Shown here: piece by piece, positions 16,843-55,009 of the stretch
Position numbering within the stretch: the first letter of the stretch is position 1
How the letters are laid out: every line of letters begins with the position of its first letter
Origin: Saccostrea cucullata
Lineage: Eukaryota
Direction: 5' to 3'
Assembly (NCBI RefSeq): GCF_032062105.1
Contig: NW_026938483.1
Span: 1 to 64,000 of the forward strand
DNA length: 64,000 bases
Position numbers and translations under genes: made by a program
The notes under the pieces: generated by a model
What the model was told of the DNA's origin: nothing
Databases searched by the model: none
What the model saw: the letters and a program-made list of their open reading frames with translations, nothing else

Positions 16843-17397
16843 AACAAGAGATGCTTGTAAAACATTTATGCCCCCCCCTCCCCCCAAATTGGAATTTTTC
16901 CAAGTCCAAAAGGGCATAACTCTGTCAAAAATGGTGCGATTGTACCCAAAACAGAAATTGACCAAGATATTTATCTGATAAATCTGTATACCAAATTTCA
17001 TCTCAGTATGTGCAACCTCTGCAAAGAAAATGAAAGGAAACTGCAAATAATTGGAATTTTTTCTAAGTCCAAGGGGCATTACTCTGTCAAAGATGGTGCA
17101 ATCGTACCCAAAACATAACTTGACCTAGATATTTATCTGATAAATCTGTATACAAAATTTCGTCACAGTATGTGCAACAATTGTGAAGAAAATGAACATA
17201 AACTGCAAATAATTGGAATTTTTCTAAGTCCAAGGGGCATAACTTGACCTAGATACTCATGTGATATATCTGTATACCAAATTTCATTTCAGTATGTGCA
17301 ACGGTTGCGAAGAAAATGAACGGAAACTAAGTGGACCGACAGACCGACCGACAGCAGCAAAGCAATATGCCCTCCCTTCTTCGAAGGGGGGCATAAT
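16843..17397 (+). mobile_element. Helentron/HINE with ~162-bp internal repeats
   Basis: AACAAG start; repeats phased at 16889, 17051, 17213; GACC/GACA microsatellite; terminal hairpin gccctccctt-c-ttcgaaggggggc then ataa. Confidence 0.8.
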
Positions 17398-17614
17398 AAA
17401 AGACAATGTTCCTAAAAATGTGAAGGAAATGATAGAAATTTCTATCACAAGTCCTTCTGAAGTCCTATATTCAAAACACAGAGCAGATATGAAAGTTAGA
17501 ATAATCTAAACACTGAATCTTAAACATATTGTATAGAGTGCGTGTAGAGGATCCATTTCCTACCTCTAGTCAAAACATAGACAACTGGCAATATCCAGCA
17601 AAAGTTTAAAACGT

Positions 17615-17937
17615 TGAGATAACGAACATTGATCGAACTAGAGAAAAAAACTACAAAGAAGACATGTACAAATCTGTATATAAATGGGTACAAAAATTTA
17701 CTTCCGATTGGTCACACCCGCCATGTGTTCCATATCATGATCGGGAAATAACGGAAAAATCCGTCGTCAATTCAGTGTATGAATAATGGACTATCAATTA
17801 GTATGAAAAACGTCAGTCAGCATTTGACTCAATAAATAAGGTCATTGTATCGACCATAGAACTTACGAAATGATGACTTTAAAACGGGACTGCTTATATT
17901 CTTGTTTCATCAACTTGTTTGTCAATAATTTTACCCC
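17615..17937 (-). mobile_element. Penelope-like 3' fragment
   Basis: Homologous to 21340-21575. Confidence 0.65.
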
Positions 17938-20229
17938 TTATATTCCAGAGGTGGGAAGACGTGCCAGTAGCAAGGGGGAGAACATTGGGGCATCCCCTGT
18001 TCATCGTTCTTCCGCCGTGGGTATTGAGTAGATAGTCAGAATATTCAAATTAATTAGACTTAAGTATTTTTTTTTAAAAAAGGCCTTGCAATTGGTATGA
18101 AAAAAATTCAACCTAAATACAAACCACTTTTAGGTTATATTTTTTTTTCAGAGGTCATTACAACGACCATAGAATTTACCAAAATGCTGATTTCAAAGGC
18201 ATTCTTAAAATTCCTACAACATCAACTTATCTGTCAATATCCTGTCTCGGTTTAAAAACCGATTCTTATCGGAGCATGCTCTAACGTATTGAATAAGTTA
18301 GGAGGCGTAAACACCAAATACAATCAAAAGCGGAAACAGTGAGTAAAGATCCAAATATGAAACATATGCAGTAGACTTTGACAACTGAAAACCGACAATA
18401 TTTATACATCTAGCTAAAATATAGACATCTGATAATATCTACAACTCTACCTCCAGTCAGAACATAGACAATTCTTCTCTTCTTCCTCTATCCCCAACCA
18501 GAGCAGACAATATGAAGATAAACAGTGATCATGCTCAAAAGTCTGTTGATTTTAAACGAGTCTGTTGATTTTCTTGCAATTGTGTCATCCACTTATTTGT
18601 TAAAAGCGTGTCTCATTTTAGATATTGTTGATTGTTTAGAGCATAGAATCACAGAATCAATTCGGAGACCCAAAACTTTCATGTCATACATATTTATTGC
18701 TATATAATTATAAATAGTTGAGGAACAATAGGAAATTGATGTCATCAAGTTAGTCATAGAGTTTTTATTAGGTTGTCATTCATATTTTTCCAGTAAAATA
18801 GCCAAACAGATGAATCAAATTCTGTATTGTTTTGTTTTGTTTGCTTTTTTTTAGTTCAAGCCGATGAATCACATTATTGTAAGAAGGATAATGAGTGTTG
18901 TGAATTGATTTAACATTGCCGATAAACGATTTCCGGGGGCTACATTTGACTAGTAATTTTATTTTATTTCTCGAATTTTTTTCAATTTTATCAATATTCT
19001 GTTTCCATCCAATTGAAGTTATTGTTGATAACTTTAAATCTTGAAATCTGATTATGTTTAATGAATTAACTCTTTCATTCACGAAAACTGGATCCAAACT
19101 ACTTAGAAAACGGAATATATAAATGTCGTCATCACTAGAAGAGACATTATTTATCCCTTAACCTATTTCAAAATGGTCAGTTTAATTGAGAATAAAAATG
19201 TTAAAAGGTAACGTTAGACAATAAAAAGCAATAAATTATTATTATATTAAAACATCGCACTCTTGGGTATTCAGGTCGTTTTCATTTAAGTAAGAATGGG
19301 AAAAAATATTACGGTTTACATCGTTTTCATTTCAAAGTCCACTGTAAACGTTAACAACCGTTCAAGAAACAAAACATGAGCCTATCCTAAAATCTTCAGT
19401 TCATCTCCATGAGTCGGTGCTGTGAATGGTTTATGTAATTTGTTTTGTTAATTCAGCTATTATTCTGTAGGCTTCCTGTAGACTGAAGTCTTTGTACAGG
19501 TTGTCCAGGCGGTTAAACACAGACTTCGTGTAATTAGCTCTCAGAGCAACACGACTCTTAATGATCTACATACAGAAAATCAATGGATTCAATCTCCACA
19601 GCGGTAGAAGGAACACTTAATTTACCTAACTTATCCCAAAATTAAGACAAAACGTGACTTTGTTCATCAATCAAACAAGTCTTACAATGTTGCCTTAAAA
19701 CAAACATCCGTTGTTTTTCTCTTTTTTTCAATTTTAATTAAAACAGATGAAAGTTATTGTAACTGTATTATGCCACCCACTGTAACATTAAGGAACTATA
19801 ATCTCATTAAACAGAACTTTGATTTTAAAGCAAATTACTCCAAAGGAAAAAGAAGTACAAGACAATGGCATGTCAATTGCAAGACCTCAAATCCGCAACT
19901 TACTTCGAGTGCATTGGAGGACTCGTAGATAGTTCAACTGACAGCGGAAAAGTGTTGAAATCCTACCTTCATATAATAATTAATTACATGTAAATTTATG
20001 CAAACGGGTTCAAATTCTCGATCGAGACTGGCCTCAACAATTGATTATCCCTAAGGGGAACAAACTTAGAATTTGGATTTTATGCTTAACAAGCAATTAT
20101 GTCTTAGCAGACTGAAAGTAATCCAGTCCATCAACTCTATGGCAAGATAGTAGTAACTCTACTGCTTTTGATTTCGAATACTGTTTGGTGAAGCTAATCA
20201 TACAAAAATGAAACTCGGTCATTGGTCGT

Positions 20230-21150
20230 TTGTAAATTTAATCTGATTATAGATTGCACAAGCTCTCTAAAGTATATTTTAAAAAGATGCTTGAGTTTCT
20301 GGTTGACGATTTCTAAGTAGTTTTGGAAGATCAGGTCTTCACAATCTGTTGAAATTCTTATGGGTACCATGCACTTGGTTATTAATAGACCTGTTTTTGT
20401 ATTCATGTGAAGCAGAATTTATTCTAAAACTTCTAAATAGGAAAAAGGAAATACTAATTTCAACTTGACATTAAAATGTAGCGATGACGTATTATCAATT
20501 AACAAAAGTTACTTCCAATCATACCCACCTGATCTTGGAATAAAAGACACCACAGAGTCTGACACGTCTGTTTCATATTTGAATAGTTTACCAGGAAATG
20601 ACAAATTAATGATAACCTAACAAAACTTTACGATCATCTTGATGGCTTTGACTTTTCAATCGTGAGCTTCCCTTAATTACGAAGGAATTTATCCTTATCA
20701 CTAGCAAATGGGGTTTATTTTCCCAGTTGCTTCGATACGCAACAGTATACTCTACACACGACCAATTTTTTTAACTGTGAGAAGCTTCAAACCAACAAGA
20801 TGAAACAATGATAACAACAGTCTTGTTTGAATTCCTCATTTCGCAAGTTCTATGGTCGAAACAATGGCCTTATCAATATCAACAAATACAATGTATCGTT
20901 AGGTCAATACTGACTAACATTTTTCATACTCATTGTTAGGTCATGATTTATACACTGAAATTTATATGAAATTTTCTGTTAAACCAATCATGACAAGCAG
21001 CATACGGTGGATGTGACCAGTCTGCAGGGGATGCTTACACCTCCATATGGCACCTAATCCCGTCTCTGATGATTTTTGAGGTCCATGTTTGCTCTACTTT
21101 CAATTTTTATTATACATATGGGCTATGAGCTTGAAAACTGTTAGTTATCT
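20230..21150 (+). mobile_element. Old Penelope-like RT fragment with tail
   Basis: KMLEFLVDD, LMGT, DDVLSIN, KFYGR remnants plus diverged tail. Confidence 0.7.
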
Positions 21151-21204
21151 GAATTCACTTATCTCCAATTTTCATAAGGCAAATTTAAATTTCTATAAAC
21201 TTAC

Positions 21205-22672
21205 GGAGATAACGAACAGTATTCAAGATCAAAAGTCCATAAAACAATACAAAAAAGGAGCAGAGCAAACACAGATCTCCAAAACATCAGAGGTGGTATC
21301 AGATGCCACAGAGGAGTGAGCATCCCCTGCCAACCGGTCTCACCCACCGTGTGCTCCTTTTCATGATCTTGAAATAACGGAAAATTCGTCGTCAATTCAG
21401 TGTATAAAAAATGGACTAACAATAAGTATGAAAAACTTCAGTCACCATTTGACTCAATGATAAATTTTATTTGATGACAAGGTCATTGTTTCAACCATAG
21501 AACTTACGAAATGATGACTTTAAATGAGACTGTTGAAAGTCTTGTTTCATCAACTTGTTCGTCAATAATTTACCTCGTTTTAGACATTGTTCATACGTAG
21601 AGCATGCTCTTGCATATCGAATCAACTGAGATATATAAACTCCTTACGCAGGTGATGAAGGTATATTGCTGCATAAGTAAGGAAAGTTGACAAAAGAAAA
21701 ATTAAAGTCTTCACGTTTATCAAAGAGCTTGGTTGTTAGATTACCATTAACGTCTTTTTCAAGTAAAATATCCAAATACATGTATGAAAAAAATTTGTCA
21801 GACTATGAGGTACCCTTACCTCAAGCTCAGCAGGATATATCATATCGACATACAGAATTGTAAGAATGGAAATTACTATTGTTACAATACGTCATCGATA
21901 TCTAAATGCCGAGTTGAAGGCCACAGCATGTGTTTTCTTCTTTTCATGCATAAGATTTTGCACAAATTCTTCTTCATATGAATACAAAAATAGGTCTGCT
22001 AATAACAGGGTGCAACTTGTACCCATGGGAATTCCAATAGATTGTTGGAACACCTAATCTCCAAAAACAACATAGATATTGTCAAACAGAAACTCAAGCA
22101 TCTTTTTCATGTCAACTTCAGAGTACTTTTGTGTACAATCAGAATGTTTTTTTTAATAAAATAATTTTGCAAATAACCAATGACAAGGTAAGTAAATTTA
22201 CGATTTCCATTTTTATTGAAAAAGCTGCTGTCAATGATATCAAAAAGCCTTGATTTTAATCTATTGTGGGGAATGCTTGTGTATAAAGTTAAAAAAGTCA
22301 TAAGTTTTTGAGAAGTTAATTTTGGTAAAACCTTGTTACTTCAAATTGTCCAAGTTCCTTGAAATTTTTAATTATCCACAACTGATTAACACCACTTCGT
22401 AAGTTCTATGGTGGATACAATGACCTTGTCAGCAAATACAATTTTTCATTGAGTCAAATTCAGAATGACGTTTTTCATACTAATTGTTAGTCCATTATTT
22501 ATACACTGAATTGACAACTGATTTTTCCGTTATTTCCCGATCATGAAAAGGAGCACACGGCGGGTGAGGCCGGTCCACAAGGGAATGCTCACTCCTCCAT
22601 GGCACCTGATCTAACCTCTGATGTTTTGGAGGTCTGTGTTTGCTCTGCTCCTATTTTGTATTGTTATCTCCA
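21205..22672 (-). mobile_element. Penelope-like element (minus, 21205-~22398) fused to an inverted partial copy (plus, ~22396-22672)
   Basis: Minus strand SGVNQLWIIKN, LYTSIPHNRLKSRL, GIPMGTSCTLLLADLFLYSYEEEF, FRYIDDVL; directly abuts a plus-strand copy of its own 3' end. Confidence 0.8.
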
Positions 22673-24032
22673 TATGTTTCATTATCAGGAAGAACATTAA
22701 AATAACAAAAGGTTGTGATCTGAGGACTTTTAAAACAAGATTCTTGAATACTCTGCATTGTATCTCAATTTAAAATTGACTGCATAGAACATTCTCTTGC
22801 AAGCCAAATTATTTGGGAATAACAACTGATAGTTTCAACACTCTAATGAAAAATTCTGTTTGAAACGGTCTGCTTATGATAAAAACACAATTACTGCCCA
22901 TCAGAATTTCAACAGATTGATAGGAAGAACAGACTACATGTTCTTAGATATTGGTAAACAGGAATTCCAGCATCCTTTTTACATTAATTCCAAGGAACGT
23001 GTGTACATATTCAGTGGGTTTTTTTTTTTTTTGGTTTCATTTAACATTTAGCAATTTATTTAAGATCAGCTATGGAAAAATACTTTCTTCTATTAAAGTG
23101 AAGGAGACAACTCTAATTATTAACATTAAAAGTAGTGTAGCAATTTGTATCCAGTCTTAAAATCTACTTGTTAATTTCAATCTAACACAAGAATCTAACA
23201 TTTTATACAAAAGTCATGAATATGAGTAACCACTGTAACAGCTCAAAATTGAATGTAACTAAATGTAAAATGACTTGGATTTGAAAAAAATATGATTTTG
23301 CAGTATGTTTAAATATATGTTATACTGTTGCACTACATTTCTTGAGAAGATATATTGAATATTTTCCATGTGATTGTCTACACTGTATTAGAACTTTATC
23401 CCATATTTGGTCCAACTCTCTTCATGGTTAACATTTGTTTAGGAATGTTAGCCTCTATTACCTAGGGATTGATGATTAAGTTGTTCAGAAAAAACCATAC
23501 AGATTCATATAATATAAACTTCAAGTCTACCATAAACAATGTTTAAAGGCTTGATGCAAGTATTTTTTTTATATCTACAATACAGATAAAGTTTTTAAAT
23601 AACTTTCATATACTTGGCTGAAAAAGAAATTTCTAAGGCAGAAATACAAAAAAATATTGAAAAAAAGTGAAAATTTGGCACTTTTCCAAATTATTCCCCA
23701 TAGGGTCCAATAGTAATATTTGAACTTTTGAGATGGCCCTCTCAGAAATCAGGATGGTAAACATTCCATTTTTAATCTTAAAACAATAAATTTATAAGAA
23801 AAATTAATTCAAGAAAATTTATCAAAATCTCTAGGGTAGAAATAATTAGACTTGGCCTCGTTTTATTGAGATTCTAAAGTTAGACATTACACAGTCAAAT
23901 TAATGTGTATGTAATCTATACAAAATCAAGATGTTAACAACACAATATTAAATGTGACTGTGTTTAATATCAAAAAATTCAATAAAAAACATATCAAAAA
24001 AATATAAAAGTATATTGCACAAGCAGGTCTTA

Positions 24033-24038
24033 TTTATT
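24033..24038 (-). terminator. Candidate heparanase polyadenylation signal
   Basis: AATAAA on minus strand ~75 nt after the stop codon. Confidence 0.4.
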
Positions 24039-24112
24039 ATAATTATGCACCAATCTTTGAAGCATTAGTTTGCCATCAGGATATATGCCCAGTTCTCCAT
24101 TATGTTTTCCTG

Positions 24113-27100
24113 TCAATGGATGCACTCTTTACTGTAAGTCTTTTCATCAGCCACAATAAAAATATAGGAGAAAGGAGGCAGGTAGACAGGTCTGGTGCCT
24201 ATTCTCGGGATCAACTGGGGCAAACTGGTGTCAGAGGTCATCTCCAAGGTAATGCCATTCAAATTCACAAATCTAAACAAAAAATATAATACCCCTGCTT
24301 TGCCAAATGCAAAAAAATAAAGTCCAAGGAAAATATGGTAAAAATACAGCGAAATGGAATTCTTTTACCACTAAATGTCCAGTACACAATACATTTTGTT
24401 GTGGATAAATTTTAAATATGAAAATCTCTAACTTATATTTTGCAGTTTTCTACTTTTATGAAAATATTTATTACAACGCTTTCACAAGATTTTTTTTTTT
24501 TTTTTTTTTACATCAAATCAATATGTCAATGTAAACTGCATCATCAGATCTAGTGTTGTGAAGGAAAATCAGGAAAATGATCAAAGACTGTTTTCAGCAA
24601 GACAGGCTTACTGTGGAATAAACTGATATGACTTAATTTGTCAAAATTTTCCAAAAAAAAAATATTTTGGAATGACCTGTACAAAAAATTGAATTAAGGA
24701 GGAAAAGCGTACCTATAAATATTATATTATAGCAAAATACCTTGACTTCAGATCTTGGTTTGGAGGTGTCAGGAGATAAATTTTTAACTGTCCATCAAGC
24801 TGAGGAAATGTCACATTTACTCCATCAGAAAGTAGATTCATACCATATAATGTTACAGAGCCTAGTGGAAACCTGAAAGGGACAGCATACTTGTAGCTCT
24901 GTGGTGAGCATCATTCATTAGTTTTAGAAATTTGTCATACAAAAATGCTACTGTCCTGATATATTTTTGAAAATTTGTGTTAATTTCTGTGATCGTACAG
25001 TCGGTGTTTTTCTACTTCTGTTCCTTTTGTGTTTGGCAAGTGTTAGACAGTTAACAACTTTAATACTGTGACTTTTATTTAGATAATGACCTTTCTGAAG
25101 AACAGTGGGCGTAAAATCTCACATCCCGGGAACTTGGAGAGGATGATATATTAAAGACTTTGTTTCCAACCAATTGTTTGTACAGCACGGTCAACCAGTA
25201 ATCCTGCACAAAAATAAAGAAATTATTTCATCAGAAAAGAAGAAAATTCTGTTGGAAAAATATACCCAATTGCAGTGTATTAAGTAAACAATATTTTGTT
25301 TTAGTCTTACAGGATTGGGGTCCACTGTTGTGGCGTCCAACAGGGCATATTTACCACCATAGAAACTCTGTCTCAGGACGACGTCCACGCTGTTTTTAGC
25401 CGCCATACCCAGCTTGTCCAGCCACCTATTGGGAATAGCAGTGATGAAGGTAACAATTTATTTAAAGATCTCAAAATGTAAGATTTTGAACTGACTTTAT
25501 TTTTCAAAAGAATTAGAATTGTAACAATTTTTTTCAGATTTCAAATCTAAGTTTTTGAACTGACTCAGTTTTTTTGAAAGTATCAGAAAACAGTTCTCAA
25601 TTTGCGTAAGTTTTGTAATATTTTTCCTAAATGTTCAGAGGTCAAACTAAAAGAAAAATGTATTTTGTTAATTTGGTATACACAATCTAACAAAGAATTT
25701 ATACAGAATTATTCTGAATTTCAGATATAGCCAAGTCAAGAGTTACCAGTTCTCAAAACTACACTTTAATCAAGTTCTACTGATGCATTTTGTTAAGCAC
25801 TAGTCTACAAATACTTCTTTCAATTCACAACATATGTGGTGTACGTATTCTGGACTTACATGAAAGCAGCCACAAAAGCGTCTGAGAGCCCCTCGGCTCC
25901 CCCTCCATAAGCCGAGCTCGTCTCCCCCAGCCACAGTTTCCTTTTGTCCCCCGTTCCCTGGATGATCCTGTTCCCAGTTTTCAGCTCCTCCTCAAAACTG
26001 TCCAGGATTTCAGAGTTTGTGAAATCATTTACTGTAGCAGTTCTTCCATTGACATAGTATCTGTAAATATAGCAGGTTTAATATAAAAGCTAGTCAAGTG
26101 TAGAGTTTTACTGATAATGTGTTATGGTATAGCTTCAAAAAGCACAATTATTTTATTTATTACAACCTATCTGATATTTACCAATTATCACATTTTTATT
26201 ATTATTATTATTATTTTTTTTTTTTTTTTTTGAAGTTAAAACTTTACTCCTTTGATAAGAAAAATCTTAGATAATTACTAAAATACCCCTAATTTGTTTC
26301 ATCGAAGTCCTAAAAGAAAGTCCTCAAAAATCTCTTATTTAACACTATTTGAACAATGAATTTTTAAACCTGCATAACAAAAAGCTTTGTCACTAAGCAC
26401 AATTTTATAGTCAGGTTGAATGATTGACATCCTAAATTAAAAATCCTATTTGTGATCAAAACAAATTCCTATTCAACTAAAAAAGACTGAATTTTCTGTT
26501 TATTGCTTTTTGTAATACACTGTCATAAGCTACATGGCCTCATAGTTGAGCAGTTGGGACATCATAGCTATAAGTTATGTGAGATTGAAAATATTGTAAA
26601 CATGTATTTTCAACAACATAATTAAGAAACTTTGGCAATTTTAGTGTCTGTCAGAATGGTTTATTTAGTCTGGATATCTTGAATCCATGGATATCTCAAA
26701 GTACTTCGGAGATAACAAGATTTGACTGTGTATACTTACTGATGAAAATTTGGAGAGGTCACTGTTCCACCTCCCTGTGTTTTCAGGAATCTACAAAAAT
26801 TTAACAACTTATTTAATTTTTCTGTCAAGAAAATGAAAATGATGAATTCATCCATGGGATGTAAAAGTACAATTTTATAATAATGGTACAATATTTTTAT
26901 TGATAACACCATTTCACGCTCACCCGAGTTGATGGCTCAGGTGAGCTTCTCTGAGCAAAAAATGTTCTGCACCTGTCTGTGATGTGTTCTCTGTAAACCT
27001 TTAACATTTTTTTAATACTTCTCTGAAACCACTAAGCCAATTTTAACCAAACTTGCCAATAATCATCCTTTGGTGAAGGAAATTCATCTTTTTTCACATG

Positions 27101-30100
27101 AAGCCCTCCCCCCCCCCTCTTTTATGGGGAAATACCTGGTATTAAGAATTAGTGAGATGGAATCCTTTCAAAATCTTCTTCTTCTTGAATTACTTGGTAA
27201 AAAAGATAAGACTTTGGTTAATTAAAGCTTCTGATCAATACATTAAAATTTGTTCAAATGAGGGCCCCCAGCAAGTTATCTGCATAAGTCAGGTTAACAG
27301 AATAGTACTACAGTCTGTACACAGTGACTACAATATGATGAAACAGTTGACTTACTCTGTAAAATAACGTACTGTGGGCTCTTTGTTCAGCTGTGTCGTG
27401 CTTGGTCCAGTGAAAATTCTTCCTTGAATTTGGGGAAATTTGGCCAACATTTGTGAAAGCTGAAAATAAGCTTGTCCTAGACTCTCTGCAGTTATATTTA
27501 TAGATGAATTCAAATGGTGAAAACTATTGGGCTCTGGAATAAATTAAATGTGTTTCACTTTGAAAAGATAAAATCATTCAGTGTTAAAGATATCATGTTT
27601 CATTTCTATTGAGTTTCTTACGATATTGTTGAATTGCCACAAAAATGCTAAATGTAAATTTTCTCTGTATGAATTTCGAGTTTATATCTTTACATAAAAA
27701 TCATGTTTTTATCAAGTGTGCAAATATTACTGTATCCTCTTTAAAATGTTCCCATTTTTTTTTTAACATTCAACAAGAAATTTTATTGAAGGGACTCTGT
27801 TTTTTAAACATATTTGATTGTCAATGTGACACTAAGATTTGAAATGAGTTCCAAAATTATAGATATTCTTCTCCTACATTTCTAGACTGTTTCTGAAAGT
27901 GATCTAAGCCTAGTTAATCATTTGATTACCATTTCCCAGTTCCCAGCCTGCCATTCTATAGCCCCTGGACTGTGTGTACTTCAGCAATAGTTCTGCGTTT
28001 GAGCTGTTCCATTGGTCATCTTTTGTTCGTAAAAGAACATTGAGGTCAAAAATCAGATCCAAGCTGGCCTTCTGCACAAATTCATGGATTTCATCCCACA
28101 TTCTAGCTGTAATAAACAAATCATATGATGATTGGTAATAAATGCTGAAACAATTCTTAATAAAAATAACTCACCTGCGTCACCAAGACCCTACTGTTCT
28201 TCATCAATAAAAGTTTTCCCTAAGTTAACTAGAATCTACACTACCTGAGAAGGGTTTCCATTAAATGATTCATATGGTTTGGTTGTTCTTGAGAAGATTT
28301 TAATTATATGTACTAATAATAGAGTCCATCTATAATATTATACATGTATGTTCCTATGCAAAACTTTAATTCCCTAATGCAGCCCCATGCTACCCTATGG
28401 GTCCTGATTTAAACAAACTTGATTCTACATTATTTTATAAAGTTCTCACATAAGTTTCCTCTTCTCTAATCCAGTGGTGGCTCTTGAGAAGAATGTAAAA
28501 AAAATTCTAACAAATTCTCATGAGTTCTCAATTATATCTTGTAGCTCTGCAGCTGAACAAACTTCATCACCTTCATCTTAGGATACTCTGTGACAAGTTT
28601 GGTTGAAATTGCCCTGGTGATCCTGGAGAAGGCATTGAAAATGTGAGAGGTTTACAGACAGATGAACAGACAGACCTCTGACACCTTTCAATCAAAAAAG
28701 CTCAGGTGGAATAAAAATTCACTGTCATATAGATTCATAAAATATCTGATACAGAGGTCACTTTGTGATTATGTAATATCAACATATACCCACCTGTCAT
28801 ATAGAACTCGGTTAGATTTTTGTGTTTATTCCTGAGGAATTCATATAATAGATCCTGTCTCTCCCATTTTCTCCCATGCTTCTTCGTGACATTAAAATGA
28901 TTATTGACATCTGATAATGTGAAGGTACAAAAATCGGCAGCGGTTCCACCAAGTCTCAGGTATGTATTGGTGTATGGTGAAAGACCTTTAGCTAAAGTTA
29001 ATACTTTTGAAGAACTGCAAAGGAAGATATGAAAAAAAAAGTTTTATACAGAGCTAGATAAATTTCGATTCATAGTAGGCAAAAACTATTGAACAAAACA
29101 GATCCATCATGAATCTTCTGTACAGACAACCCTATTCCATGTGTTCAACAAAATTGTTTTGAGAACATCGTTGTTGGCATGTTGGCATATGTAGGTTCCA
29201 TTGTTCGTTCGCCCTAAAAATTGCATGATACGCCCGTCAAATATATTGTTCAATAATCATAAATTGGTTAAGGTGCAAGAAAATCAGATAACCTTGATTA
29301 ACAGATTAACACAGATTTCAATGATCTAATTTCCCGTTCATGTTTAAAATATATTGTACATACATCTCTAAGAGATACAGTGTAGGGATTAATTATAACA
29401 AATAATACATCATATAATTCTAAACTGGCTGTGTTAGAACTTAACAAATATCCATCTGCTCGCCCTAAAACTTGTTCCAGTTACAGTGTATTGAATTTGA
29501 TTCATGTTTTAAGCCAGATGCTATATGGCATTCACAATTTTGAAAGGGCACCATTGATCATCATAACAATTTAATGTTACTGAATAACCATAAATAAAAT
29601 CTAATGAATTTCTTTCCACATTTTTAGGTTGCACAAATTTTTAAAAGGCACCCTTAAAATTGCCTATCAAAAAGTAAATAAATGAAATAATTAATTCATT
29701 TTCAGTATATACGTAGAGCCCCCCCCCCCCCACTCCTGACCCTGGGGCCTTGAAATTCACAATTCTGCAAGATTAGGGCCCTTGTTCATCATAACTATAT
29801 AGGTAGTTCATCTGTCATATGCATATTGCCACAAATGGTCACACTCAATGCATGACCTGTCAAAGACCTGAAGACCTGTTTGGAGATTTTTTTTTGAGAT
29901 CAAAGGGAGATTCTTCAACGGTAAAACCTTCAACATCCGCTGTTCATTTCTATAATGGACCTTTTAACATCTCAGTCCTTTAATTGTTTTCAAAACATAG
30001 CGCAATTCGTAAAAATAACACGGATGTTTCCCCCTAATTAACATTGATATTTATCATATTAGTCATCTAATTAACTATAGTGCAAACACTAAGACATTCA

Positions 30101-31277
30101 AAAAAATTAGAATCAAATCAAAAATTAATTAAGACTAAATAAACATTGTTCCTCATATCAAAATTTGAGAAAAAATATTCCAAGTTCGTAAAGGAAATAA
30201 ATAGAAAAAATGATATAGGCCTATGTTATTTTTTAATTCATATCAGTTTATATATACAAATATATCTATATAAGTATTGGGCGAACCACATATAGGGCGA
30301 ACAAGATATTGGGCGAGAAATATGTACCCCGGTAATTTTATTTCAATGAACACATGTTTAAAGTTTTCATTATATTATACAATACTAATTTAGTTTTTAA
30401 TCATACATTAAACATCAATTTGTATGATTTGTCAGACATGAAGTTCATTAATATTTCCCTCCAAAATTTTTTTGTTTACATTTCACAATGGAGAATGATG
30501 ATAGTTTGATAGTTTGATAGTCATATTTGTGTTTTAATAAATCTACTTTTTCTTGATATAGTTCTACTAATCTTTCATTTTGTTCGGGCGATTAATTGAT
30601 ATTGAACGAAAAATTCACATTACATGTTAGTTCTTCTTTATATAGATCAACCTCTTTGACCTTGTCAATGATTGGTTAAAACCTGCGACGAACGGACTCC
30701 CGCTGTCTTATGATTTTCCTATTTAACAGTGTAGATCAGGCAAATGAACCCGTTACCGCATATGTACATAGAGTGGGTCAGTGGGTTTAGAATCTTTTAA
30801 TTATCAGTTTAAGCTCTGGTTTCTATTTGGGGAGGGGGTGCAATGTCTGTCTTCAAGATCCTGTGGAAAGGATACTTCCACTTTTTTGCAAAATAAAGCC
30901 ACCTATCTAAAGTCACCTGAAAATTTGATTTGTTTAGGAGACGTTGTACAGTACTTTACCTTAAGTTGAGTTTCTCCCATTTGTGCTGGATGAGCCCGGA
31001 GTCAAGTGTAATGCCTACAAATTGACTTGATGTTGTCGAAATTATCGTGTCAAAAGTAATCAGTCATCTAATTAACTATAGTGCAAACACTAAGACATTA
31101 AAAAAAATTAGAATCAAATCAAAAATTAATTAAGACTAAATAAACATTGTTCCTCTCAAAATTTGATCCCAAGTTCATGGCATCTGACTGGATCAGTCGT
31201 ACAAGCAGTGAGAAAAGTACGATATATCCACTAAATTTCTGTCTAAAATGATTGATGAAAACTTTCATTTCCCTCAT
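24113..31277 (-). CDS. HPSE: Heparanase (GH79 endo-beta-glucuronidase), 10 exons; exon 1 interrupted by a 94-bp insertion in this sequence
   Basis: Exons with GT-AG ends and consistent phases: 31277-30960 (insert at 31155-31062), 29014-28794, 28106-27930, 27533-27356, 26790-26740, 26060-25860, 25425-25311, 25203-25091, 24872-24741, 24272-24113. Motifs [32 protein letters not shown] (acid/base Glu), [14 protein letters not shown] (nucleophile Glu), [24 protein letters not shown]. 523 aa without the insert; hydrophobic N-terminal signal-like stretch. Confidence 0.93.
26918..27270. mobile_element. Degenerate CvA/pearl-like HINE in heparanase intron 4
   Basis: gctcacc..gctcaggtgagc hairpin end, aaccaaacttg and ttgttcaaatga motifs. 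Confidence 0.55.
28180..28715. mobile_element. Degenerate CvA/pearl-like HINE in heparanase intron 2
   Basis: aagtttggttgaaattg, (acag)n and gctcaggtg end motifs. Confidence 0.55.
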
Positions 31278-32329
31278 TCTGCATTTTGTTTTGATTTTGA
31301 AATGTACTTCGATTCCGATTGAATTTGCCACTCAATTCGATCCCGATTATAATTAGGCACAAAGTTTTCTCTCTTCTGGTAAGAGGGATGGAGGGTGGCA
31401 GAATTCTTTGAAAAGCACAAATTACATTTGTTTACAGACATGCAGGCAATAGTAGAAGGTAGAATATTCATTTCATTACAAGTATCAAAAGAGTTCACTA
31501 CTAAGAAATTAATTCTATAATAAAACCAACAATGAACCATATTTTTTCCCCTGCTTAAATTGCACAAGGCCACTGGTCTCTCAGTCTGTCTGTCACAAAA
31601 TATTTAATCTTGGTCATAACTTTTGACTGAGAAGAGACAGGACCTTCACATTTCCTGTGACCTTACCAAACATGTTTTTACTTGACCCCATGACCTTGAC
31701 CTTATTTTTTTTACTTACTATTCAAAAATTTTAATATACTTGGTCATAACTTTTGAATGAGAAAAAAATATGGATTTTATATTTCACATGTATATAACTT
31801 GTGAAAAAGAGACATTTTCAAATAAATTTACATTTTGCATAATGTGACCTTGAAAATGATGTTTGACCTTCTTTTTCATATAAAATGAACAGATGTGTAA
31901 ATAAGACATTGACTTTTTTTCAAATGTACTATGTACTTTGACCTGTGATTTGATGTTTGGCATAATTATCAAAAATGCTTAAAATTGCATGACCATTTTT
32001 TTTTAACGAGAAGATTGGGTGGTTAAAACTTGTGCATTACCTTACATAAGGTGTTTTTTTCCAAATGTACTATCATGCAGGGATTTTCAATTTACAACTT
32101 TACTATCTTTGTGACTTTATGACCTTGACCTAGAAGTTTCACCTACTTATTTGACCTCAGTTCCTTGATCTTGAAGTAATTAACTTGCAATTTTAAAAGC
32201 AATTTTATTATAGATTCAATTTTATTTTCTATCTAGATCTTGTGTATAATGGACAGACATAAAAGGACATGTACACATGGACAAGAGAGTTACAATACCC
32301 TGTGCAATATTGCATTCCAACCACCATGG

Positions 32330-42500: not shown

Positions 42501-45500
42501 CAAAATTCAAAATGGCGGACTGTTACATACGATGTTTTTTGAGCATATAACTCAGTAAATACGCAATATTTTCTTATCCAGTAAAGCATTACATGAAATT
42601 CGAGCTATAAACTACCTATTTCTTGAAAGGTTTGAAAATTATAATGATCTATATGTGTAATATACTCCAACATAAGTTATGAAAATTCTGTGAAGTTCGG
42701 GACCGCGCAGTGCCGATTTCGTTACCTGCTTCTCACAAATTCAGAAGATACCTTCCATTTTACACATATTTATAAATGTAAAGGTGTAGAAAATAATTAT
42801 TTTAATAGAATTGGATCATTAAAGTATCCAAAAACGTTCAGAAATCAAGTTTTAGGATGCAAGTCTGAAAATTTGTCGGCGAGATAATCAGATTGACATT
42901 GAAGAAGCACTACAATTTATTGATTTCTGAGTAATTAAACTTATAAAATTGATAATAAATAATAATTTAACCATCAATTATATCATCACACATATTCTTT
43001 ATTTATACAGGCAATTTTGGCTTATTAAAGCCGTTTTACATGTTGAAAATATCTATTTTTCTATTTACACCTGCTTTTACCTGAATTATTTTTTAACAGA
43101 AAATTCCGATCTAAATTATGTAAAAAGATTTGAAAAATTTAATTTATTACGAATACAATGATATATAATACATACCGGTAGTATAAATGAAATATTTTGA
43201 CCCTTAATAGTTCAGTTTTAAACTGCACTCCAATTCTTCTAAAACGCTCTAAGGGGCAGCCAGGCAAACACTCTAAGGATATGGCCAGTGCGTCAAATCG
43301 TGGCATTAAGGGGTAAAGAGTTAAAGATCATCTTAGGATAAGTGTTACTTTTCTTCCATCATTTTCAATCATGTATTGCTTCAAATATTTGAATATTAAT
43401 AGCTAGTCCATGATTTGTTGTATGAGATATACGTCTCTTTCTACATATTTTGGAGGGGCACGTGAATGTAGGATTTTATATATGCTTGATTAAATTTTTT
43501 ATTAGTGTTTTATGAAATTAGATAGATTTTAAATAAAAAAACTAATTAAAAAACATTCTGCTCAAAGTTCTACTTTCAACTTCCCGTGCTGAGCAAGGGA
43601 ACTTGTCTTTTGCATGTATATGTCGTACTTTAAATAATGTAAACTTTTATATGTAGGGGTAATGTAACGTTTTTTGTAGCAGTAATGACCATGTAGCGGT
43701 AATGAAAATTTTTAAAATATAACGGTAATGATACGCACCCAATTGAATGTTGGGACCTGTACAGTATACAGGTACTGTAATGCGAGTTCATTACGTAATC
43801 GTTTATGGCAGGAGGTGTGAATTGTTGATAGGCCTCAGGTATTCTGCTTTGGCACACATTAATTATTTTAATGAGTGAAAAGGACAGTCAGAATGATACA
43901 GGACACAAACAAGGGACATAGGGACGCCTGCTAGGGGCACAGGGGTGCACTGATTTGAGGGCGAGGCGCGGTGCCTCTCCATTTCCCTCTAGCTGGAACA
44001 CTGCTCAAGGAACATATTAAAACTCACCCAAGCAGAAAATAATTACCTGCATTTCATTTTCCTTTTTGCATTAAGATGAGGGGATTATGGATTATCTGTT
44101 TTGTTTATAAGGAACAGGAATGACCTGGCTGAGTTGATTGACTCGCTGGAGGATCAGATCGCTGGTAATGAGGTCAAGGAGGACAGCGAGTCCGAGGCTG
44201 GTAAGTCAGGGTACGACAGTCAACCAGGTATTGTTCTGGGTACGACAGTCGACCAGCTAATGTCCTGGGGAGAAAAAGGCCATAAGGCAAAAGAAGATTG
44301 AAAATTAAGAATATTTCTGTTCATGTACTGCAGATAATAGAATAGTGTGTGATTTTATTTTCAGATACCTATTATATTTGATAAAAATAAGTTTATGGCA
44401 ATCAGCGTCAATATTTGATAGGGTTATGCATGTACATACTTGTATACTAATGAACCTGATCGCTATGTAAATCTCTTTTTGATAAAGTTGTACGTTCATG
44501 AATACTTATGAATATGATCCAATTTTTACATTAAACAGTATCATTGACAGAGAACACAAATGGTGCAGTCAAGAAAGAAGAGAAGGTGGATTCAGCTGAG
44601 GAGGAGGTGAACGGTTCATCCACCGTGAAGAAGGAACCAGATAAGATGGACGAAGTAGACGGAGCAACGGAAGAAAAGGATGATAACACAGAGGAAAAGA
44701 AAAATGTTGACGCAGTAAAATGTGAAAGTAAGGACCCAAAACAGAAAGTGAAAGTAGAGGTCAAAAGTGAAGATTCTGTACAGGAGGAAAAGAATGTCAA
44801 GATGAAAGAAGAACCTCATCAAGAAGTGAAATTAGAGAATTCTGTAAAGGTTGAAGAATCTTCTACTAAAGAGGAGAAAATTAAAGATAAAGAAATTAGT
44901 GTTAAAAGTGAGATCCCTGAAGAACAGGGAGGAAAAGAGGAAAAGGGGGGTAATAATGAAGACACTGTGACAGTGAAACTGGAAAAAACAGATATTAAGG
45001 AAGAAAGGCCCACAAAGATAGACATGCAAGATAGAGTGGAAGAGGCAGAAATTAAAAAGGAAGAATCCACAGATGTGGATGCATGTACAATGAGTAAAGC
45101 AGAAGAAGCAGAAATCCCAAAGGAAAATGAATTGGCAGATACCTCACACAAGGGAAAGGAGGGGGCACCTGATGAAGACGACCACAGCAAGGGGGGAGAG
45201 ACAGGAGAAACTAAAACTGAGAAATCTGTAGAGGCTAGTGCTTCAGGTGATGAACCTTTGGAGACTAGTGCTTCAGGAGTTAAAGATACTGAACCAGAAA
45301 ATAGTAAAACAGATGGAATGAAAAAGGGAGAGCAATCAGAGGTAGCGACCTCAGTGAAAGAGACCAGGGAAACTGACACATCAGGTAGCAATGTCTCAGT
45401 GAGTAGTAATGATAAAGCAGTGGGTGGGGAGAACAGGGAACAGGAAAGGTTAACTGGGACTGATACGGTAGAATGCACTGATAATAAGACAACTGAGGCT

Positions 45501-48500
45501 GATAAAACTGTCAAGTGTGATTCTGTAAAAGAAAAGGGTGATCCTGAAGATCGAAATTCTAACAATATTGAACCTAATGAAGCAAACAATCACAGTAAAA
45601 GTAGTACTGTCACTGAAAATAAGACAGAAATTGATACTGAAAAAGAAGATATTCTGAAAAAAGATGATAGTGAATTAAAGTTAAGTCCTGAAAAAAATGT
45701 GAATGACACTTATAATGAGAGTAAAGAAAAAGCACCTGAAGAGGAAAGCCACAAAGAAGAAGAAAAAGTGAAGTTAAAGGACAATAAAGATTTGAAAGAT
45801 TCAGGGAAGGAGGATAAATCAGGGAATATCCCTGAGAAAAGTCCAGCTACAAAGTTGTCTGGTGATGGTGAGGTAGAATCTCCAAACTCAGAAAGTAAAG
45901 AAACACAGAAAACCGAAAATAAGGAAACCAAAGAAAATACACAGAGTGATGTCTCTGCAGAAATTACAGAGAGAGAAACACAGGAAAGTACAGAAAATGG
46001 AGAAGCTGGAACAGTAGATGCCAATAAGAGAGAAAGCAACATAGAGGTTACATCAGAGGAGGCAGGCAAAGGTAAACATGATCAAACATCAGAGAAGCCT
46101 GACCTTACATCCAATAAGTCTGAGGTTTCAACAGAGAAACCTGACCATACAACAGATAAGTCTGATATTACATCCAGTAAGTCACAGCAGTCTGCAGAGA
46201 AACCTGACCATACAACAGATAAGTCTGACGTAACATCCAATAAGTCTGAGGTTTCCACAGAGAAACCTGACCATACAACAGATAAGTCTGATATTACATC
46301 CAATAAGTCACAGCAGTCTGCAGAGAAACCTGACCATACAACAGATAAGTCTGAGGATTCTACAGAGAAGAAAAAGGAGAAAAATGATGATGACAGTGAA
46401 AATAAATCAGCTGAGAAAACAGAAGAATCTACTAAGGAATCAAAAGAAGCGCATTCTGAGAATGATTCTAATGCTCTGAAACTGAAAGAGAAAACAAAGA
46501 AACCAAACCTTAAAGGGGGCCGTAAGAGAGGGATAGAGTACGAAGAATCAGCTGAAGATTCCCCCGTAGAACCCAACTCCAAAAAAGCCAAGGATGGCAA
46601 GAAAATCATTCCACGGGGAAAACGCAGGACTCCAAAGAAAGTGGACTCCTCTTCTGACAGCGATGATGTACCACTGAGTAAAATAGGGGCCAAGAATGGG
46701 GACTCCAACAGAAAACGCCCCGAGTCATCCCCCAATGTACCCTCCAGGAAAAGTAACAGACCTGTCAAGGTAATCAAAGAAATTACATTCCATTTGTAGG
46801 TTCTCTTGAACATTTCTTAGCCCATTACACGTAATAATTATTATAGTAACAGAGTTTCAAATTTCTAGATCAGTGTTGTTAGCTGATACCTTATATCTCC
46901 TTTCAAATACTTGCAATACTTTTTATATATGAATTGAATTTATTTCAAAGCTAAAATCAGTATGACAGCAATTTCTTTACAATTGCAAAATCAGTAAAAT
47001 AAAATTAAGATCTAATTCTGTCCAAGAACTATATAGTTGTTTAATGGTGCTAACTAATCGATAATATGTTTACAGAAGAAGAAAATTTCCAGTGAAGAAG
47101 AGGATGAGAGTCCAAAGAAAACAAAGTCTAAACGAAAAAATAATATGGAGAAAGGGAGTGATAGTGAGGAGGAAGGGAGCCCAGCACCAAAGAAAAACTC
47201 CAAGAAATCAAAACCACCCACCAAAAAGACAAAGAAACAAGAACCGGACTCTAGTGATGAAGATGTCCCACTCAAAAATACGAAAAATGCTAAAAACAAA
47301 CCAAAACCGAAGTCTGAGGAAGCTGTTCCTAGCGACGAGGACGACCAGGGGAGGAGGAGGAGTGCTCGCGTGAGGAACATGAGACAGAGAAAGGAGCCAA
47401 CACCTGAGCCCTCGAGCTTCGAGGAGGACAATGTGGACAGCGAGTTTGAGATCGGCTCAGAACAGGAAACTACGGACGACGAATTTACTCCAACCAAAGG
47501 ACGCAATGCACAAAGACAAGAAGCCCGTAAACGTAAGTTAGAATCTACAGGTATGAAGTTTTTAAGTGCTATGGCAGAACTCCAGAAATTTTTTTCAAAG
47601 CAGTTGGTACATTAAGATTTTTTTTTCTCAAAGATGACAGGAATATAGAAATTCTTTTTGATGTCTTGGCATTCATGATGCCAAAGATGTCTGTTCCTTC
47701 CTTAAATTTTTTTAAAAATCAAAACCTTTACAGAAATGTCCCCTTTCTGTTTGTAGGTCAGTTAGAAGAAGACGAAGCAGAAGAAGATATTCCTAATGAT
47801 ACACCGTGCTGTAAATGTCAGAAAACTCATCAGCCAGAATGGGTAAAACATTTACCTTTTGTATTATAAATATAGTCAACACAAGCAAGCTACGAAAATA
47901 GTAACATAGCAATAGCATATACTAAATTTTCTTTAAGATTCAGTATGTGTTAATTATGTGTTTCGTTGATCATTATACCGTGGCTTTCTACACTGCCTGT
48001 TTTAAACCTCCACAGAAAATTAGATTTCTGTTTCATTTTTACTGTGTGCCTGTCTTAGATCACCACTGATAATTAACTCTGTTTCAGTTATTATTGTGTG
48101 ATAAATGTGATGCAGCCTTCCACACCGCTTGTCTCCGACCACCACTTATGATTATTCCGGACGGAGATTGGTACTGCCCGCCCTGTGAACATGTGAGTCT
48201 CGAACCTTAAATTGTTAATAACGAAAAGTTTCCAAGTGTTGTTTCCATAGTAAATGTCATATAAATATTGTATATATACCTCAGAAATAATTCTAAAAAA
48301 AAGAATTCAGAGTCATGGACATATCGTAACAGTTGCTTATTGAGATGAACACATAGTACATGTAGTTGATCATTGAATACATTTCAGAAATCTCTGGTCA
48401 CTCGGTTACAAGAAAATCTTAAAGACTTAGATACCAATCTAAAGAAGCATGAGAGAATTATTAAAAGGTAAACCTGAAGGAAATTCAGATGCATAAGTAT

Positions 48501-54500: not shown

Positions 54501-55009
54501 CCCACCACAGATGGAGCAGGAATACGGGTCAGGTTTCCAAGGTGACCAGGAGGAGGAGGGGGTGTCAGACATTGCTGACATTGTCAAGTAAGTCAGGACT
54601 CTATGTTTACAGGAAAATGTATTGCAAGTGACAGTAATTGAACAGTTATTTATAGTTTGGTTTGGAAAGGCAGACTGTCTCATCTTGAATAGTACTTCAA
54701 TCATTTTGCCATTTATTGCTTTGTTCGATAGATGGTTGCTACCATTCATAATTGTGAGTCAAGAAAACAAATAAAGAATCTCTCCTATTTCTTTTATGAA
54801 AAACAAATCTGACAGAGAATGTTTTTACGTTTTTGCCATTTTTTGAACAAAATCATCATAAATTGAGATAAAACACATATCTGTTTTGTTTGAAACTAAA
54901 TGAAATGAGATTGATATGTAGATAGAAAAGTGTAAGCTATTAAGGTATTCTGTACTTACAGAGATTTGTAATGAATGTTGTTTTTGTTTATAGGTGTTTT
55001 AAGGCATAG
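39596..55009 (+). CDS. RSF1: Remodeling and spacing factor 1 (DDT/WHIM N-terminus, PHD finger), 17 exons, ~2494 aa
   Basis: Exons 39596-39740, 40117-40211, 40834-40926, 41129-41257, 41575-41651, 44112-44200, 44539-46769, 47076-47550, 47757-47842, 48088-48192, 48388-48467, 48813-48864, 49179-49404, 49731-49923, 50792-50973, 51377-54587, 54994-55009; phases join into one ORF. Motifs [105 protein letters not shown]. Confidence 0.93.
40282..40579. mobile_element. Tc1/mariner (pogo-like) MITE with internal ~120-bp duplication
   Basis: TA|cagtaaaact ... agttttactg|TA; repeated cacggatatagc motifs. Confidence 0.75.
41986..44003. mobile_element. Non-autonomous hAT-like (hAT5-type) element in RSF1 intron 5
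   Basis: Perfect 15-bp TIR cagtgttccagctag / ctagctggaacactg; 5-bp TSD ctcaa (41981-41985, 44004-44008). Confidence 0.85.
42247..43320. mobile_element. piggyBac-like MITE nested in the hAT-like element
   Basis: TTAA on both flanks; TIR ctcttttcccctta / taaggggtaaagag; repeated subterminal cccttaatgacgacttttgacgc. Confidence 0.75.
44539..46769 (+). CDS. RSF1: RSF1 exon 7 (acidic E/K-rich disordered region)
   Basis: 751-aa ORF bounded by acceptor aaacag|TA and donor AAG|gtaatc, in phase with flanking exons. Confidence 0.9.
46087..46360 (+). repeat. Coding tandem repeat, 63-nt unit alternating as a 126-nt dimer ([11 protein letters not shown](I/V)TS(S/N)KS...)
   Basis: Visible in the RSF1 exon 7 translation. 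Confidence 0.9.
50262..50807 (+). repeat. 42/45-bp tandem array of a duplicated RSF1 splice acceptor plus exon start (13 copies)
   Basis: Unit ccctactttctgtttgacag|tgagaccgtgtctgag; acceptor G at 50283, 50325, 50367, 50409, 50454, 50499, 50541, 50586, 50631, 50676, 50718, 50760, 50791. Confidence 0.95.
51377..54587 (+). CDS. RSF1: RSF1 exon 16 (acidic/basic region, then P/Q/G/M-rich low-complexity domain with AT-hook)
   Basis: 1081-aa ORF; acceptor ttatag|TT, donor AA|gtaagt; KRGRPK at ~53278-53295. Confidence 0.9.
53875..54036 (+). repeat. Coding 27-nt repeat (PEIGHRPHA)x6
   Basis: Near-perfect ccagaaattggtcatagaccacatgct repeats. Confidence 0.95.

What the first reader, a model, noticed from the sequence alone, without database searches (positions are those of the whole stretch)
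30061..31166. Heparanase exon 1 broken by a 94-bp templated insertion copied from its own intron 1
31062-31155 is a 93/94-identical direct copy of 30061-30154, exactly 1001 bp away. Both are followed by tcaaaatttga (after 3 extra bases at the source), an 11-nt microhomology. The insert stops the signal-peptide frame (TGA 31121-31119) and puts a TGA (31066-31064) just before the downstream frame, so using an AG inside the insert as acceptor cannot rescue it. Deleting exactly 94 nt gives ...[28 protein letters not shown]... and a 523-aa protein whose other nine exons and both catalytic Glu are intact. This points to a very recent null allele made by microhomology-primed template switching (Pol theta-type repair), or to an assembly chimera.
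Basis: partly seen in the sequence, partly recalled or inferred. Interest (0 to 1): 0.8.

Follow-up and report, generated by a model that had tools for sequence, protein, structure and literature searches.

The report
Repeat fragment breaks one heparanase allele
In this assembly, exon 1 of an invertebrate heparanase gene carries a 112-base piece of a common genomic repeat, most like the copy 1 kb away in intron 1; transcripts from public runs lack it, so it is one broken allele (or an assembly error), not a lost gene.

Summary
The repeat is real: 30058-30154 and 31059-31155 match at 95/97, 1001 bp apart.

1. The sequence is not unique. It belongs to a dispersed repeat of about 506 nt with more than 150-200 copies. 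The intron copy (29818-30323) is full length. The exon piece is internal (element positions 247-370).

2. The insert is 112 nt (31065-31176), not 94. The "11-nt microhomology" tcaaaatttga and the codons for MNLGSNFE are part of the insert. Spliced RNA contigs from two organisms join 31177 directly to 31064/31062, giving ...SDA-IL-ITFDT.... Removing the 112 nt gives an open 514-aa GH79 heparanase. The true junction microhomologies are 2 and 3 nt.

3. A second contig, C6852, covers the same locus at 90-98% identity. It also lacks the insert. Its exons 2-10 are intact (25 synonymous against 13 non-synonymous differences).

The insert is closest to the intron-1 copy (110/112, plus private 3-nt and 9-nt gaps), then to that copy's counterpart on C6852. 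It has no element end and no target-site duplication.

Best reading: a polymorphic or private null allele, made when a break was repaired by copying the nearby repeat. An assembly artefact is not excluded, because no genomic reads of this individual were available. Interest is modest.

The parts
31065..31176 (-). 112-nt insert in exon 1, a fragment of an interspersed repeat (element positions 247-370 of about 506). It shifts the frame.
   Evidence: Absent from the spliced RNA contigs X10 record 6 and X1 record 3. Aligns to the intron copy 30064-30187 with 110 matches, 2 mismatches and gaps of 3 and 9 nt. Absent from contig C6852.
30064..30187 (.). Closest genomic relative of the insert and its likely template (or an allele of the template). 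It lies inside the intron-1 repeat copy, in the same orientation as the insert.
   Evidence: Best hit of the insert in the whole assembly. It shares with the insert the variant TCAAAATTTG, seen in none of the 35 other copies aligned.
29818..30323 (.). Full-length copy of the roughly 506-nt dispersed repeat, in intron 1.
   Evidence: The boundaries are shared with other full-length copies. At least 213 candidate matches genome-wide. No tRNA or Rfam match.
31177..31268 (-). Exon 1, first part: ATG at 31268 and a signal-peptide-like stretch [30 protein letters not shown], then the first two bases (AT) of the next codon (Ile in the wild-type reading).
   Evidence: Translations. Covered by RNA contig X10 record 6, 31177-31278.
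30960..31064 (-). Exon 1, second part: [35 protein letters not shown], with the splice donor after 30960.
   Evidence: RNA contigs X1, X9 and X10. Joint 29014/30960 with GT..AG on the sense strand.
31119..31121 (-). Premature TGA in the start-codon frame, created by the insert.
29015..30959 (-). Intron 1.
   Evidence: Joint 29014 to 30960 in three runs, ends CT..AC on the + strand.
24113..29014 (-). Exons 2-10 of the heparanase gene: 29014-28794, 28106-27930, 27533-27356, 26790-26740, 26060-25860, 25425-25311, 25203-25091, 24872-24741, 24272-24113.
   Evidence: Exons 2-6 from RNA joints. Exons 7-10 from the open frame and splice sites. Pfam PF03662 on exons 3 and 6. Matches to the human heparanase 50 kDa chain.

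Best explanation
The window carries one allele of a functional, expressed GH79 heparanase gene in which 112 nt are inserted between GCCAT and ACTGATTAC of exon 1, just after the signal-peptide-like stretch. The extra DNA is an internal piece of a roughly 506-nt interspersed repeat. It is most like the copy 1 kb downstream in intron 1, in the same orientation. I infer that a double-strand break in exon 1 was repaired by end joining with filler synthesis. One 3' end paired through 2-3 nt with the nearby repeat copy or its allele. About 124 nt were copied, with two slippage losses of 3 and 9 nt. The new strand then rejoined the other end. The result is a +1 frameshift with a stop 19 codons into the insert, and no route to a secreted enzyme, so the allele is a null. 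It is not fixed: insert-free transcripts exist, and the second contig of the locus also lacks the insert.

Shown: the extent of the insert, its repeat origin and nearest relative, the loss of frame, and the wild-type junction. Inferred: the break and the copying mechanism, and that the insert is a real allele rather than an assembly error.
For: The insert is defined by RNA. X10 record 6 runs ...30960-31062 | AT | 31177-31278. X1 record 3 runs ...30960-31064, and its last 84 nt fall in bin 31123-31321 (24.2 x 84/199 = 10.2, exactly as tabulated), with nothing on 31065-31122.

Removing 31065-31176 gives an open 1545-nt CDS with GNEPN and [11 protein letters not shown].

Repeat family. The insert's nearest relative is the intron copy (110/112 plus 2 gaps), then the C6852 copy (108/112). 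No other copy carries both gaps.

The variants TAAGA, AATTAGAA and TAGTC are, with two single-copy exceptions, confined to these three sequences. TCAAAATTTG is private to the insert and the intron copy.

The fragment lacks both element ends (positions 247-370 of 506) and has no target duplication. The wild-type flanks are contiguous. Microhomology is AT and ACT.

The skipped piece ends GA..TG, so it is not an intron.

C6852 lacks 31179-31064. Its exons 2-10 are open, with 25 synonymous and 13 non-synonymous differences.

No other gap of 12 nt or more between the two contigs has a local template. That argues against a pervasive assembler habit at this locus.
Against: No genomic reads of the assembled individual were found. 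All runs held 12% or less of the sampled words, and only contigs could be laid, so the insert has no read-level support.

112-124 nt copied from 1 kb away is longer and more distant than the usual polymerase-theta templated inserts, which come from sequence in close proximity to the break (PMC4490562). The MMBIR insert search of PMC8421209 looks for templates only within 100 bp of the insertion.

The upstream 2-nt microhomology holds only for the C6852-type allele of the repeat (TTAT), not for the present intron copy (TTAC).

The insert is not identical to any copy in the assembly, so the exact template is not in hand.

Only 40 of about 155 candidate copies were scored, so a closer unscored or unassembled copy cannot be ruled out.

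X1's junction is inferred from depth arithmetic, not read directly.
Confidence: 0.55

Rival explanations
1. Assembly or consensus artefact. The individual has only insert-free exon 1, and the 112 nt were introduced by mis-consensus or polishing at a structurally heterozygous, repeat-rich spot.
For: The only transcripts seen lack the insert. The companion contig C6852 shows a clearly abnormal patch exactly here. Across 31345-30770 there are 19 small deletions plus the 116-nt gap, essentially no mismatches and no insertions. The rest of that contig shows the usual mix. Intron 1 is also rearranged there. So consensus quality around exon 1 is doubtful in this assembly. The insert's private 3-nt and 9-nt gaps are the same deletion-only kind of difference. 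Other first-stage notes on this genome report exon-breaking local copies (unchecked).
Against: The window's exon 1 flanks agree with RNA contigs without gaps: 0 differences over 30960-31064 in X1, and 3 over 31177-31278 in X10. The insert is not a verbatim copy of any assembled sequence. It has clean junctions with no loss of flanking bases. That is not what collapsed or chimeric consensus usually gives. No other templated gap was found in 20 kb of contig-to-contig comparison.
Confidence: 0.22
2. Ordinary mobile-element event. A family member, from the intron copy by local hopping or from elsewhere, inserted into exon 1 and was later trimmed. Alternatively, a fragment of repeat RNA or cDNA was captured at a break.
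For: The sequence belongs to a family of more than 150 copies, many of them variously truncated. The insert differs from the intron copy at 2 sites where it carries the state of other copies. Only part of the family was scored.
Against: The fragment contains neither end of the element (positions 247-370 of 506). There is no target-site duplication and no poly(A). The wild-type flanks are retained to the base, so two later deletions would each have had to stop exactly at the original target. The best and second-best matches are the copy in the same gene and its counterpart on the allelic contig. By chance that is expected roughly 1-2 times in 150.
Confidence: 0.15
3. One reading: a 94-nt insert (31062-31155) primed on an 11-nt microhomology tcaaaatttga that pre-existed in the exon.
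Against: RNA contigs lack 31156-31176 as well. Similarity to the repeat continues through tcaaaatttga into atcccaagttc. C6852 lacks that stretch too. The paralogue on C11275 aligns from 'IL-ITFD' onward; the match begins at the junction, so it shows no extra residues there but does not span it.
Confidence: 0.03

Closest known systems
Templated (filler) insertions of polymerase-theta-mediated end joining (PMC4490562; PMC7165422)
   Same: The inserted DNA matches sequence near the break. Microhomology at the junctions is short. The flanks are kept almost intact. It is a germline event that creates heritable indels.
   Different: The inserts described are usually short and copied from sequence in close proximity to the break. 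Here 112-124 nt were copied from about 1 kb away, with two internal slippage gaps. Dependence on the polymerase cannot be tested here.
MMBIR / template-switch insertions (PMC8421209)
   Same: A template switch at microhomology gives an insert of tens to hundreds of bases copied from a nearby template. Multi-step or imperfect copying is common.
   Different: The detection signature described there is an inverted copy within 100 bp. Here the copy is direct and 1 kb away, and there is no associated copy-number change.
Canonical transposon or retroposon insertion into an exon
   Same: The inserted DNA is a member of a high-copy interspersed repeat, and it knocks out the reading frame.
   Different: No element terminus, no target-site duplication and no tail. 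The fragment is internal.
Human heparanase HPSE, GH79 (PDB 5E8M and related entries)
   Same: Exons 3 and 6 align to the 50 kDa subunit (E 1.6e-14 and 5e-19). The motifs WELGN|EP and [13 protein letters not shown], which hold the two catalytic Glu, are present. The gene has a multi-exon structure and the protein an N-terminal signal-like peptide.
   Different: An invertebrate paralogue, one of at least two heparanase-like genes in this genome (the window locus with its allelic contig C6852, plus C11275). The N-terminal region shows no detectable match to solved chains. Linker processing was not examined.

Membership tests
GH79 heparanase | Glyco_hydro_79n domain | tested here: met
   PF03662 on exon 3 (42.1 bits, E 7e-11) and exon 6 (24.9 bits), both over the 23.1-bit cut-off. 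Also found in the genome scan.
GH79 heparanase | Catalytic proton-donor Glu (N-E-P) and nucleophile Glu (G-E-T/S) | tested here: met
   GWELGNEPNSF and [13 protein letters not shown] in the spliced translation. The second aligns to [13 protein letters not shown] of the human 50 kDa chain. The roles of the residues come from established knowledge of human heparanase.
GH79 heparanase | Secretory signal peptide | tested here: inconclusive
   [30 protein letters not shown] has the basic, hydrophobic and small-residue pattern. No predictor was available.
Polymerase-theta-type templated insertion | Insert matches a nearby template | tested here: met
   110/112 to 30064-30187, 1 kb away in the same orientation. 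It is the best hit in the assembly.
Polymerase-theta-type templated insertion | Microhomology between break ends and template at both junctions | tested here: inconclusive
   3 nt (ACT) downstream. 2 nt (AT) upstream only with the C6852-type allele, and 0 with the present intron copy.
Polymerase-theta-type templated insertion | Short insert, template in close proximity to the break | tested here: not met
   112 nt from 1001 bp away. [quoted passage not shown] PMC8421209 searches within 100 bp.
Polymerase-theta-type templated insertion | Dependence on POLQ | not testable with these tools
   Needs genetics.
Canonical transposable-element insertion | Element terminus or termini present, and target-site duplication | tested here: not met
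   The fragment spans positions 247-370 of 506. The flanks GCCAT|ACTGATTAC are contiguous in wild-type RNA, with no duplicated bases.
Spliceosomal intron (as an explanation of the 112-nt skip in RNA) | GT-AG (or GC-AG / AT-AC) ends | tested here: not met
   The skipped piece begins GA and ends TG on the sense strand. Its boundaries cannot be shifted.

The most novel reading that the evidence does not exclude
A natural germline example of long-range templated break repair in a marine invertebrate. More than 100 nt were copied, with polymerase slippage, from a repeat 1 kb away in the same gene. The result is a segregating loss-of-function allele of a secreted heparanase, which the animal tolerates because a paralogue exists.
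Probability: 0.45. Interest if true: 0.35.

Novelty: new member of a known kind. Interest (0 to 1): 0.25.

Why it matters
The main value is as a correction. The gene is not lost: it is expressed and under purifying selection. The lesion is a single-allele event or an assembly flaw. An annotator using this contig would wrongly call a pseudogene or a truncated protein. If the allele is real, it is a fully readable natural case of filler-DNA repair using an intronic repeat as template. It is larger and more distant than the usual polymerase-theta scars. That is of some use for cataloguing how repeats inside genes feed loss-of-function variation in highly polymorphic invertebrates. It opens no long-standing question.

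Tried and rejected
1. Cryptic splicing of the insert: rejected. The ends are GA..TG and cannot be shifted.

2. C6852 as a second, independently decayed null allele, and its 4-nt loss at the insert site as a deletion between AGATGCC and AGATGAC of an insert-bearing ancestor. I considered this. The exon-1 zone of C6852 differs from the window by deletions only (19 small deletions plus the 116-nt gap, about 0 mismatches, microhomology 0-1). One deletion overlapping the site is therefore not surprising. The patch looks like bad consensus, so I draw nothing from it except absence of the insert.

3. SINE classification of the repeat: no tRNA or Rfam match. It remains unclassified.

4. Search for the 49-aa truncated ORF in public protein sets, to find the insert allele elsewhere: no candidates. 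This is uninformative, because short ORFs are probably not held.

5. Looking for genomic reads of the assembled individual: none served. The best run held 12% of the words.

6. Testing whether templated gaps are common between the two contigs: none among 11 gaps of 12 nt or more.

7. Solved-structure search with exon 1b: no hit.

Searches were exon by exon, by reference. The joined CDS was used only inside local scripts, for frame checks and a local tblastn against the paralogous contig.
Full report
**Observation.** The window shows a 97-nt direct repeat, 30058-30154 against 31059-31155, 95/97 identical and spaced exactly 1001 bp.

**It is a member of a repeat family.** The 97 nt has at least 153 candidate matches in this 1.17-Gb, 23,869-contig assembly, and 40 were scored at 89-98% identity.
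- The intron copy extends to a roughly 506-nt unit (29818-30323). Other copies share its boundaries. One search found 213 candidates.
- The unit has no tRNA-like or Rfam-recognised part. I leave it unclassified.
- The exon piece corresponds to element positions 247-370. It is internal and holds neither end.

**True extent of the insert.** Only assembled contigs of public runs could be laid. No run held more than 12% of the sampled words.
- RNA-seq run X10 (organism B) has a 1104-nt contig laid as 25858-26060 | 27356-27533 | 27930-28106 | 28794-29014 | 30960-31062 | two letters AT | 31177-31278.
- Run X1 (organism A) is labelled 'DNA?' but its contig is spliced, so it is cDNA. It differs by 0-3 bases per exon, the closest of the four runs to the window.
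- The 867-nt X1 contig ends ...28794-29014 | 30960-31064. Its remaining 84 nt fall in bin 31123-31321. Depth there is 24.2 x 84/199 = 10.2, as tabulated. The 12.8 in bin 30924-31122 equals 105 nt, so nothing lies on 31065-31122.
- Both transcripts therefore lack 31065-31176. The wild-type junctions read GCCAT|ACTGATTAC (organism A) and GCCATATTGATTAC (organism B). Both encode ...SDA-IL-ITFDT....
- The skipped piece starts GA and ends TG, and its boundaries cannot be shifted. It is not an intron. These RNAs come from insert-free alleles.

Independent support comes from the repeat family. Similarity of the exon piece to the family continues past tcaaaatttga into atcccaagttc. The 94-nt cut restored the frame only because 94 and 112 are both 1 mod 3.

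**The gene.** With 31065-31176 removed, ten exons give an open 1545-nt CDS of 514 aa.
- Introns 1-5 are confirmed by RNA joints with GT..AG ends.
- Exons 3 and 6 hit Pfam PF03662. They also hit the human heparanase 50 kDa chain at E 1.6e-14 and 5e-19.
- GNEPN and [11 protein letters not shown] are present.
- As assembled, the ATG frame stops at 31121-31119, 19 codons into the insert. The downstream frame is closed by TGA 31066-31064 and has no Met in exon 1b. The allele therefore cannot give a secreted enzyme.
- The joined model was used only in local scripts. All database searches were exon by exon, by reference.

**The second contig.** C6852 (24.3 kb) is colinear with window 36054-15571 at 90-98% identity.
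- Its exons 2-10 have no indels, intact splice sites and an open frame. They differ from the window at 25 synonymous and 13 non-synonymous codons, which indicates purifying selection.
- The X1 transcript carries a mosaic of window-type and C6852-type variants. I therefore read the two contigs as alleles of one locus in one species.
- C6852 lacks the insert, with a gap at 31179-31064.
- Its exon-1 zone is abnormal. Between 31345 and 30770 it differs from the window by 19 small deletions (1-23 nt) plus the 116-nt gap at the insert site, with essentially no mismatches, no insertions and 0-1 nt of microhomology. The rest of the contig shows ordinary mixed divergence.
- Intron 1 is also rearranged there.
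- I take this patch as probably poor consensus. I use it only as a second witness that an insert-free form exists.
- No third copy of exon 1 is present in the assembly.
- A more distant heparanase paralogue lies on C11275. Its exon 1 aligns from 'IL-ITFD' onward; because the match begins at the junction, it shows no extra residues there but does not span it.

**Origin of the insert.** Against 36 family copies and the genome-wide ranking, the insert is closest to the intron-1 copy: 110 matches, 2 mismatches, gaps of 3 and 9 nt. Next is the copy on C6852 (108/4). All others score lower, and no copy carries both gaps.
- The variants TAAGA, AATTAGAA and TAGTC are, with two single-copy exceptions, confined to these three sequences.
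- TCAAAATTTG is shared only by the insert and the intron copy.
- At its two mismatches the insert carries the C6852-copy state. The template was therefore probably an allele of the intron-1 element, not the exact sequence now in the window.
- Junctions on the sense strand are GCCAT|GAACTT (element ...TTAT| or ...TTAC|) and ...TTAGATG|ACTGAT (element ACTAAT). That gives 2 and 3 nt of microhomology.
- There is no target duplication, no loss of flanking bases and no element terminus.

**Mechanism.** These features fit repair of a break by end joining with filler synthesis on a nearby template: templated insertion in the polymerase-theta or template-switch sense (PMC4490562, PMC7165422, PMC8421209). 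Two slippage gaps occurred during copying. The features do not fit transposition. The size (112-124 nt) and distance (1 kb) exceed what those papers describe as typical. I therefore say it works like such repair and do not file it as a proven polymerase-theta product. Among 11 other gaps of 12 nt or more between the two contigs, none has a local template. The event is therefore not part of an obvious local pattern.

**Artefact or allele.** No genomic reads of the assembled animal were available. The case for a real allele:
- The exon flanks agree exactly with RNA.
- The junctions are clean.
- The insert is identical to no other assembled sequence.

The case for an artefact:
- Only insert-free transcripts were seen.
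- Consensus quality in the companion contig is doubtful at exactly this spot.
- Earlier unchecked notes report exon-breaking local copies elsewhere in this genome. One of these loci does show a 75-nt direct repeat 100 nt apart, next to an RNA_pol_L_2 (RPB11-type domain) match.

I put the real-allele reading at about 0.7. The whole best explanation, including the mechanism, is at 0.55.

**Verdict.** It also missed the repeat family and the allelic contig. This is an ordinary kind of lesion, an exon disrupted by copied repeat DNA, in one allele of an otherwise healthy gene. Interest is modest.

Noticed in passing
G000:C6852:1-24313 (L011-L013) against window 36054-15571: An unpurged second contig of the same locus at 90-98% identity, with the heparanase gene on its + strand. 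It looks like the other haplotype kept as a separate contig.
   Followed up: yes
C6852 about 4990-5340, against window 31345-30770: A patch with 19 small deletions (1-23 nt) plus a 116-nt gap at the insert site, essentially no mismatches and no insertions. The splice donor of exon 1 is lost. Flanking kilobases show normal mixed divergence. Probably a bad consensus patch, but unexplained.
   Followed up: partly
C6852 5340-9700, against window 30730-29590: Intron 1 is structurally different between the two contigs. On C6852 the repeat copy sits about 170 nt after exon 1 (5360-5849). A second copy of 30730-30322 follows at 6978-7503, with no repeat at the orthologous site.
   Followed up: partly
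window 29530-29810; C6852 7923-9606: A tandem repeat of about 170 nt in intron 1. It is present as one or two units in the window and expanded to about ten units on C6852. It is also very deep in the DNA contigs of run X2.
   Followed up: no
G000:C11275 about 17090-30112 (L014, L015), minus strand: A second, more distant heparanase-like gene, 29-61% identical by aligned exon segment. At least five exons were detected, with an intron of about 10 kb. It could cover for loss of the window gene.
   Followed up: partly
window 51346-54591 (+) and 44544-46799 (+): Two long open frames of 1081 and 751 aa with no Pfam match. The first is acidic and Ser-rich, then Pro/Gln/Met-rich, with six tandem PHAPEIGHR units. 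It is probably a large disordered exon of a nuclear protein.
   Followed up: partly
run X1: The tool labels it 'DNA?', but its 867-nt contig is spliced across five introns, so the run is cDNA/RNA. Its variants are a mosaic of the two assembled haplotypes.
   Followed up: partly
L048:1325-1499 (G000:C2706:110592-110766): A 75-nt direct repeat, 95% identical and 100 nt apart, immediately upstream of an RNA_pol_L_2 (RPB11-type domain) match. This is a local tandem-type duplication, not a dispersed-repeat fragment.
   Followed up: partly
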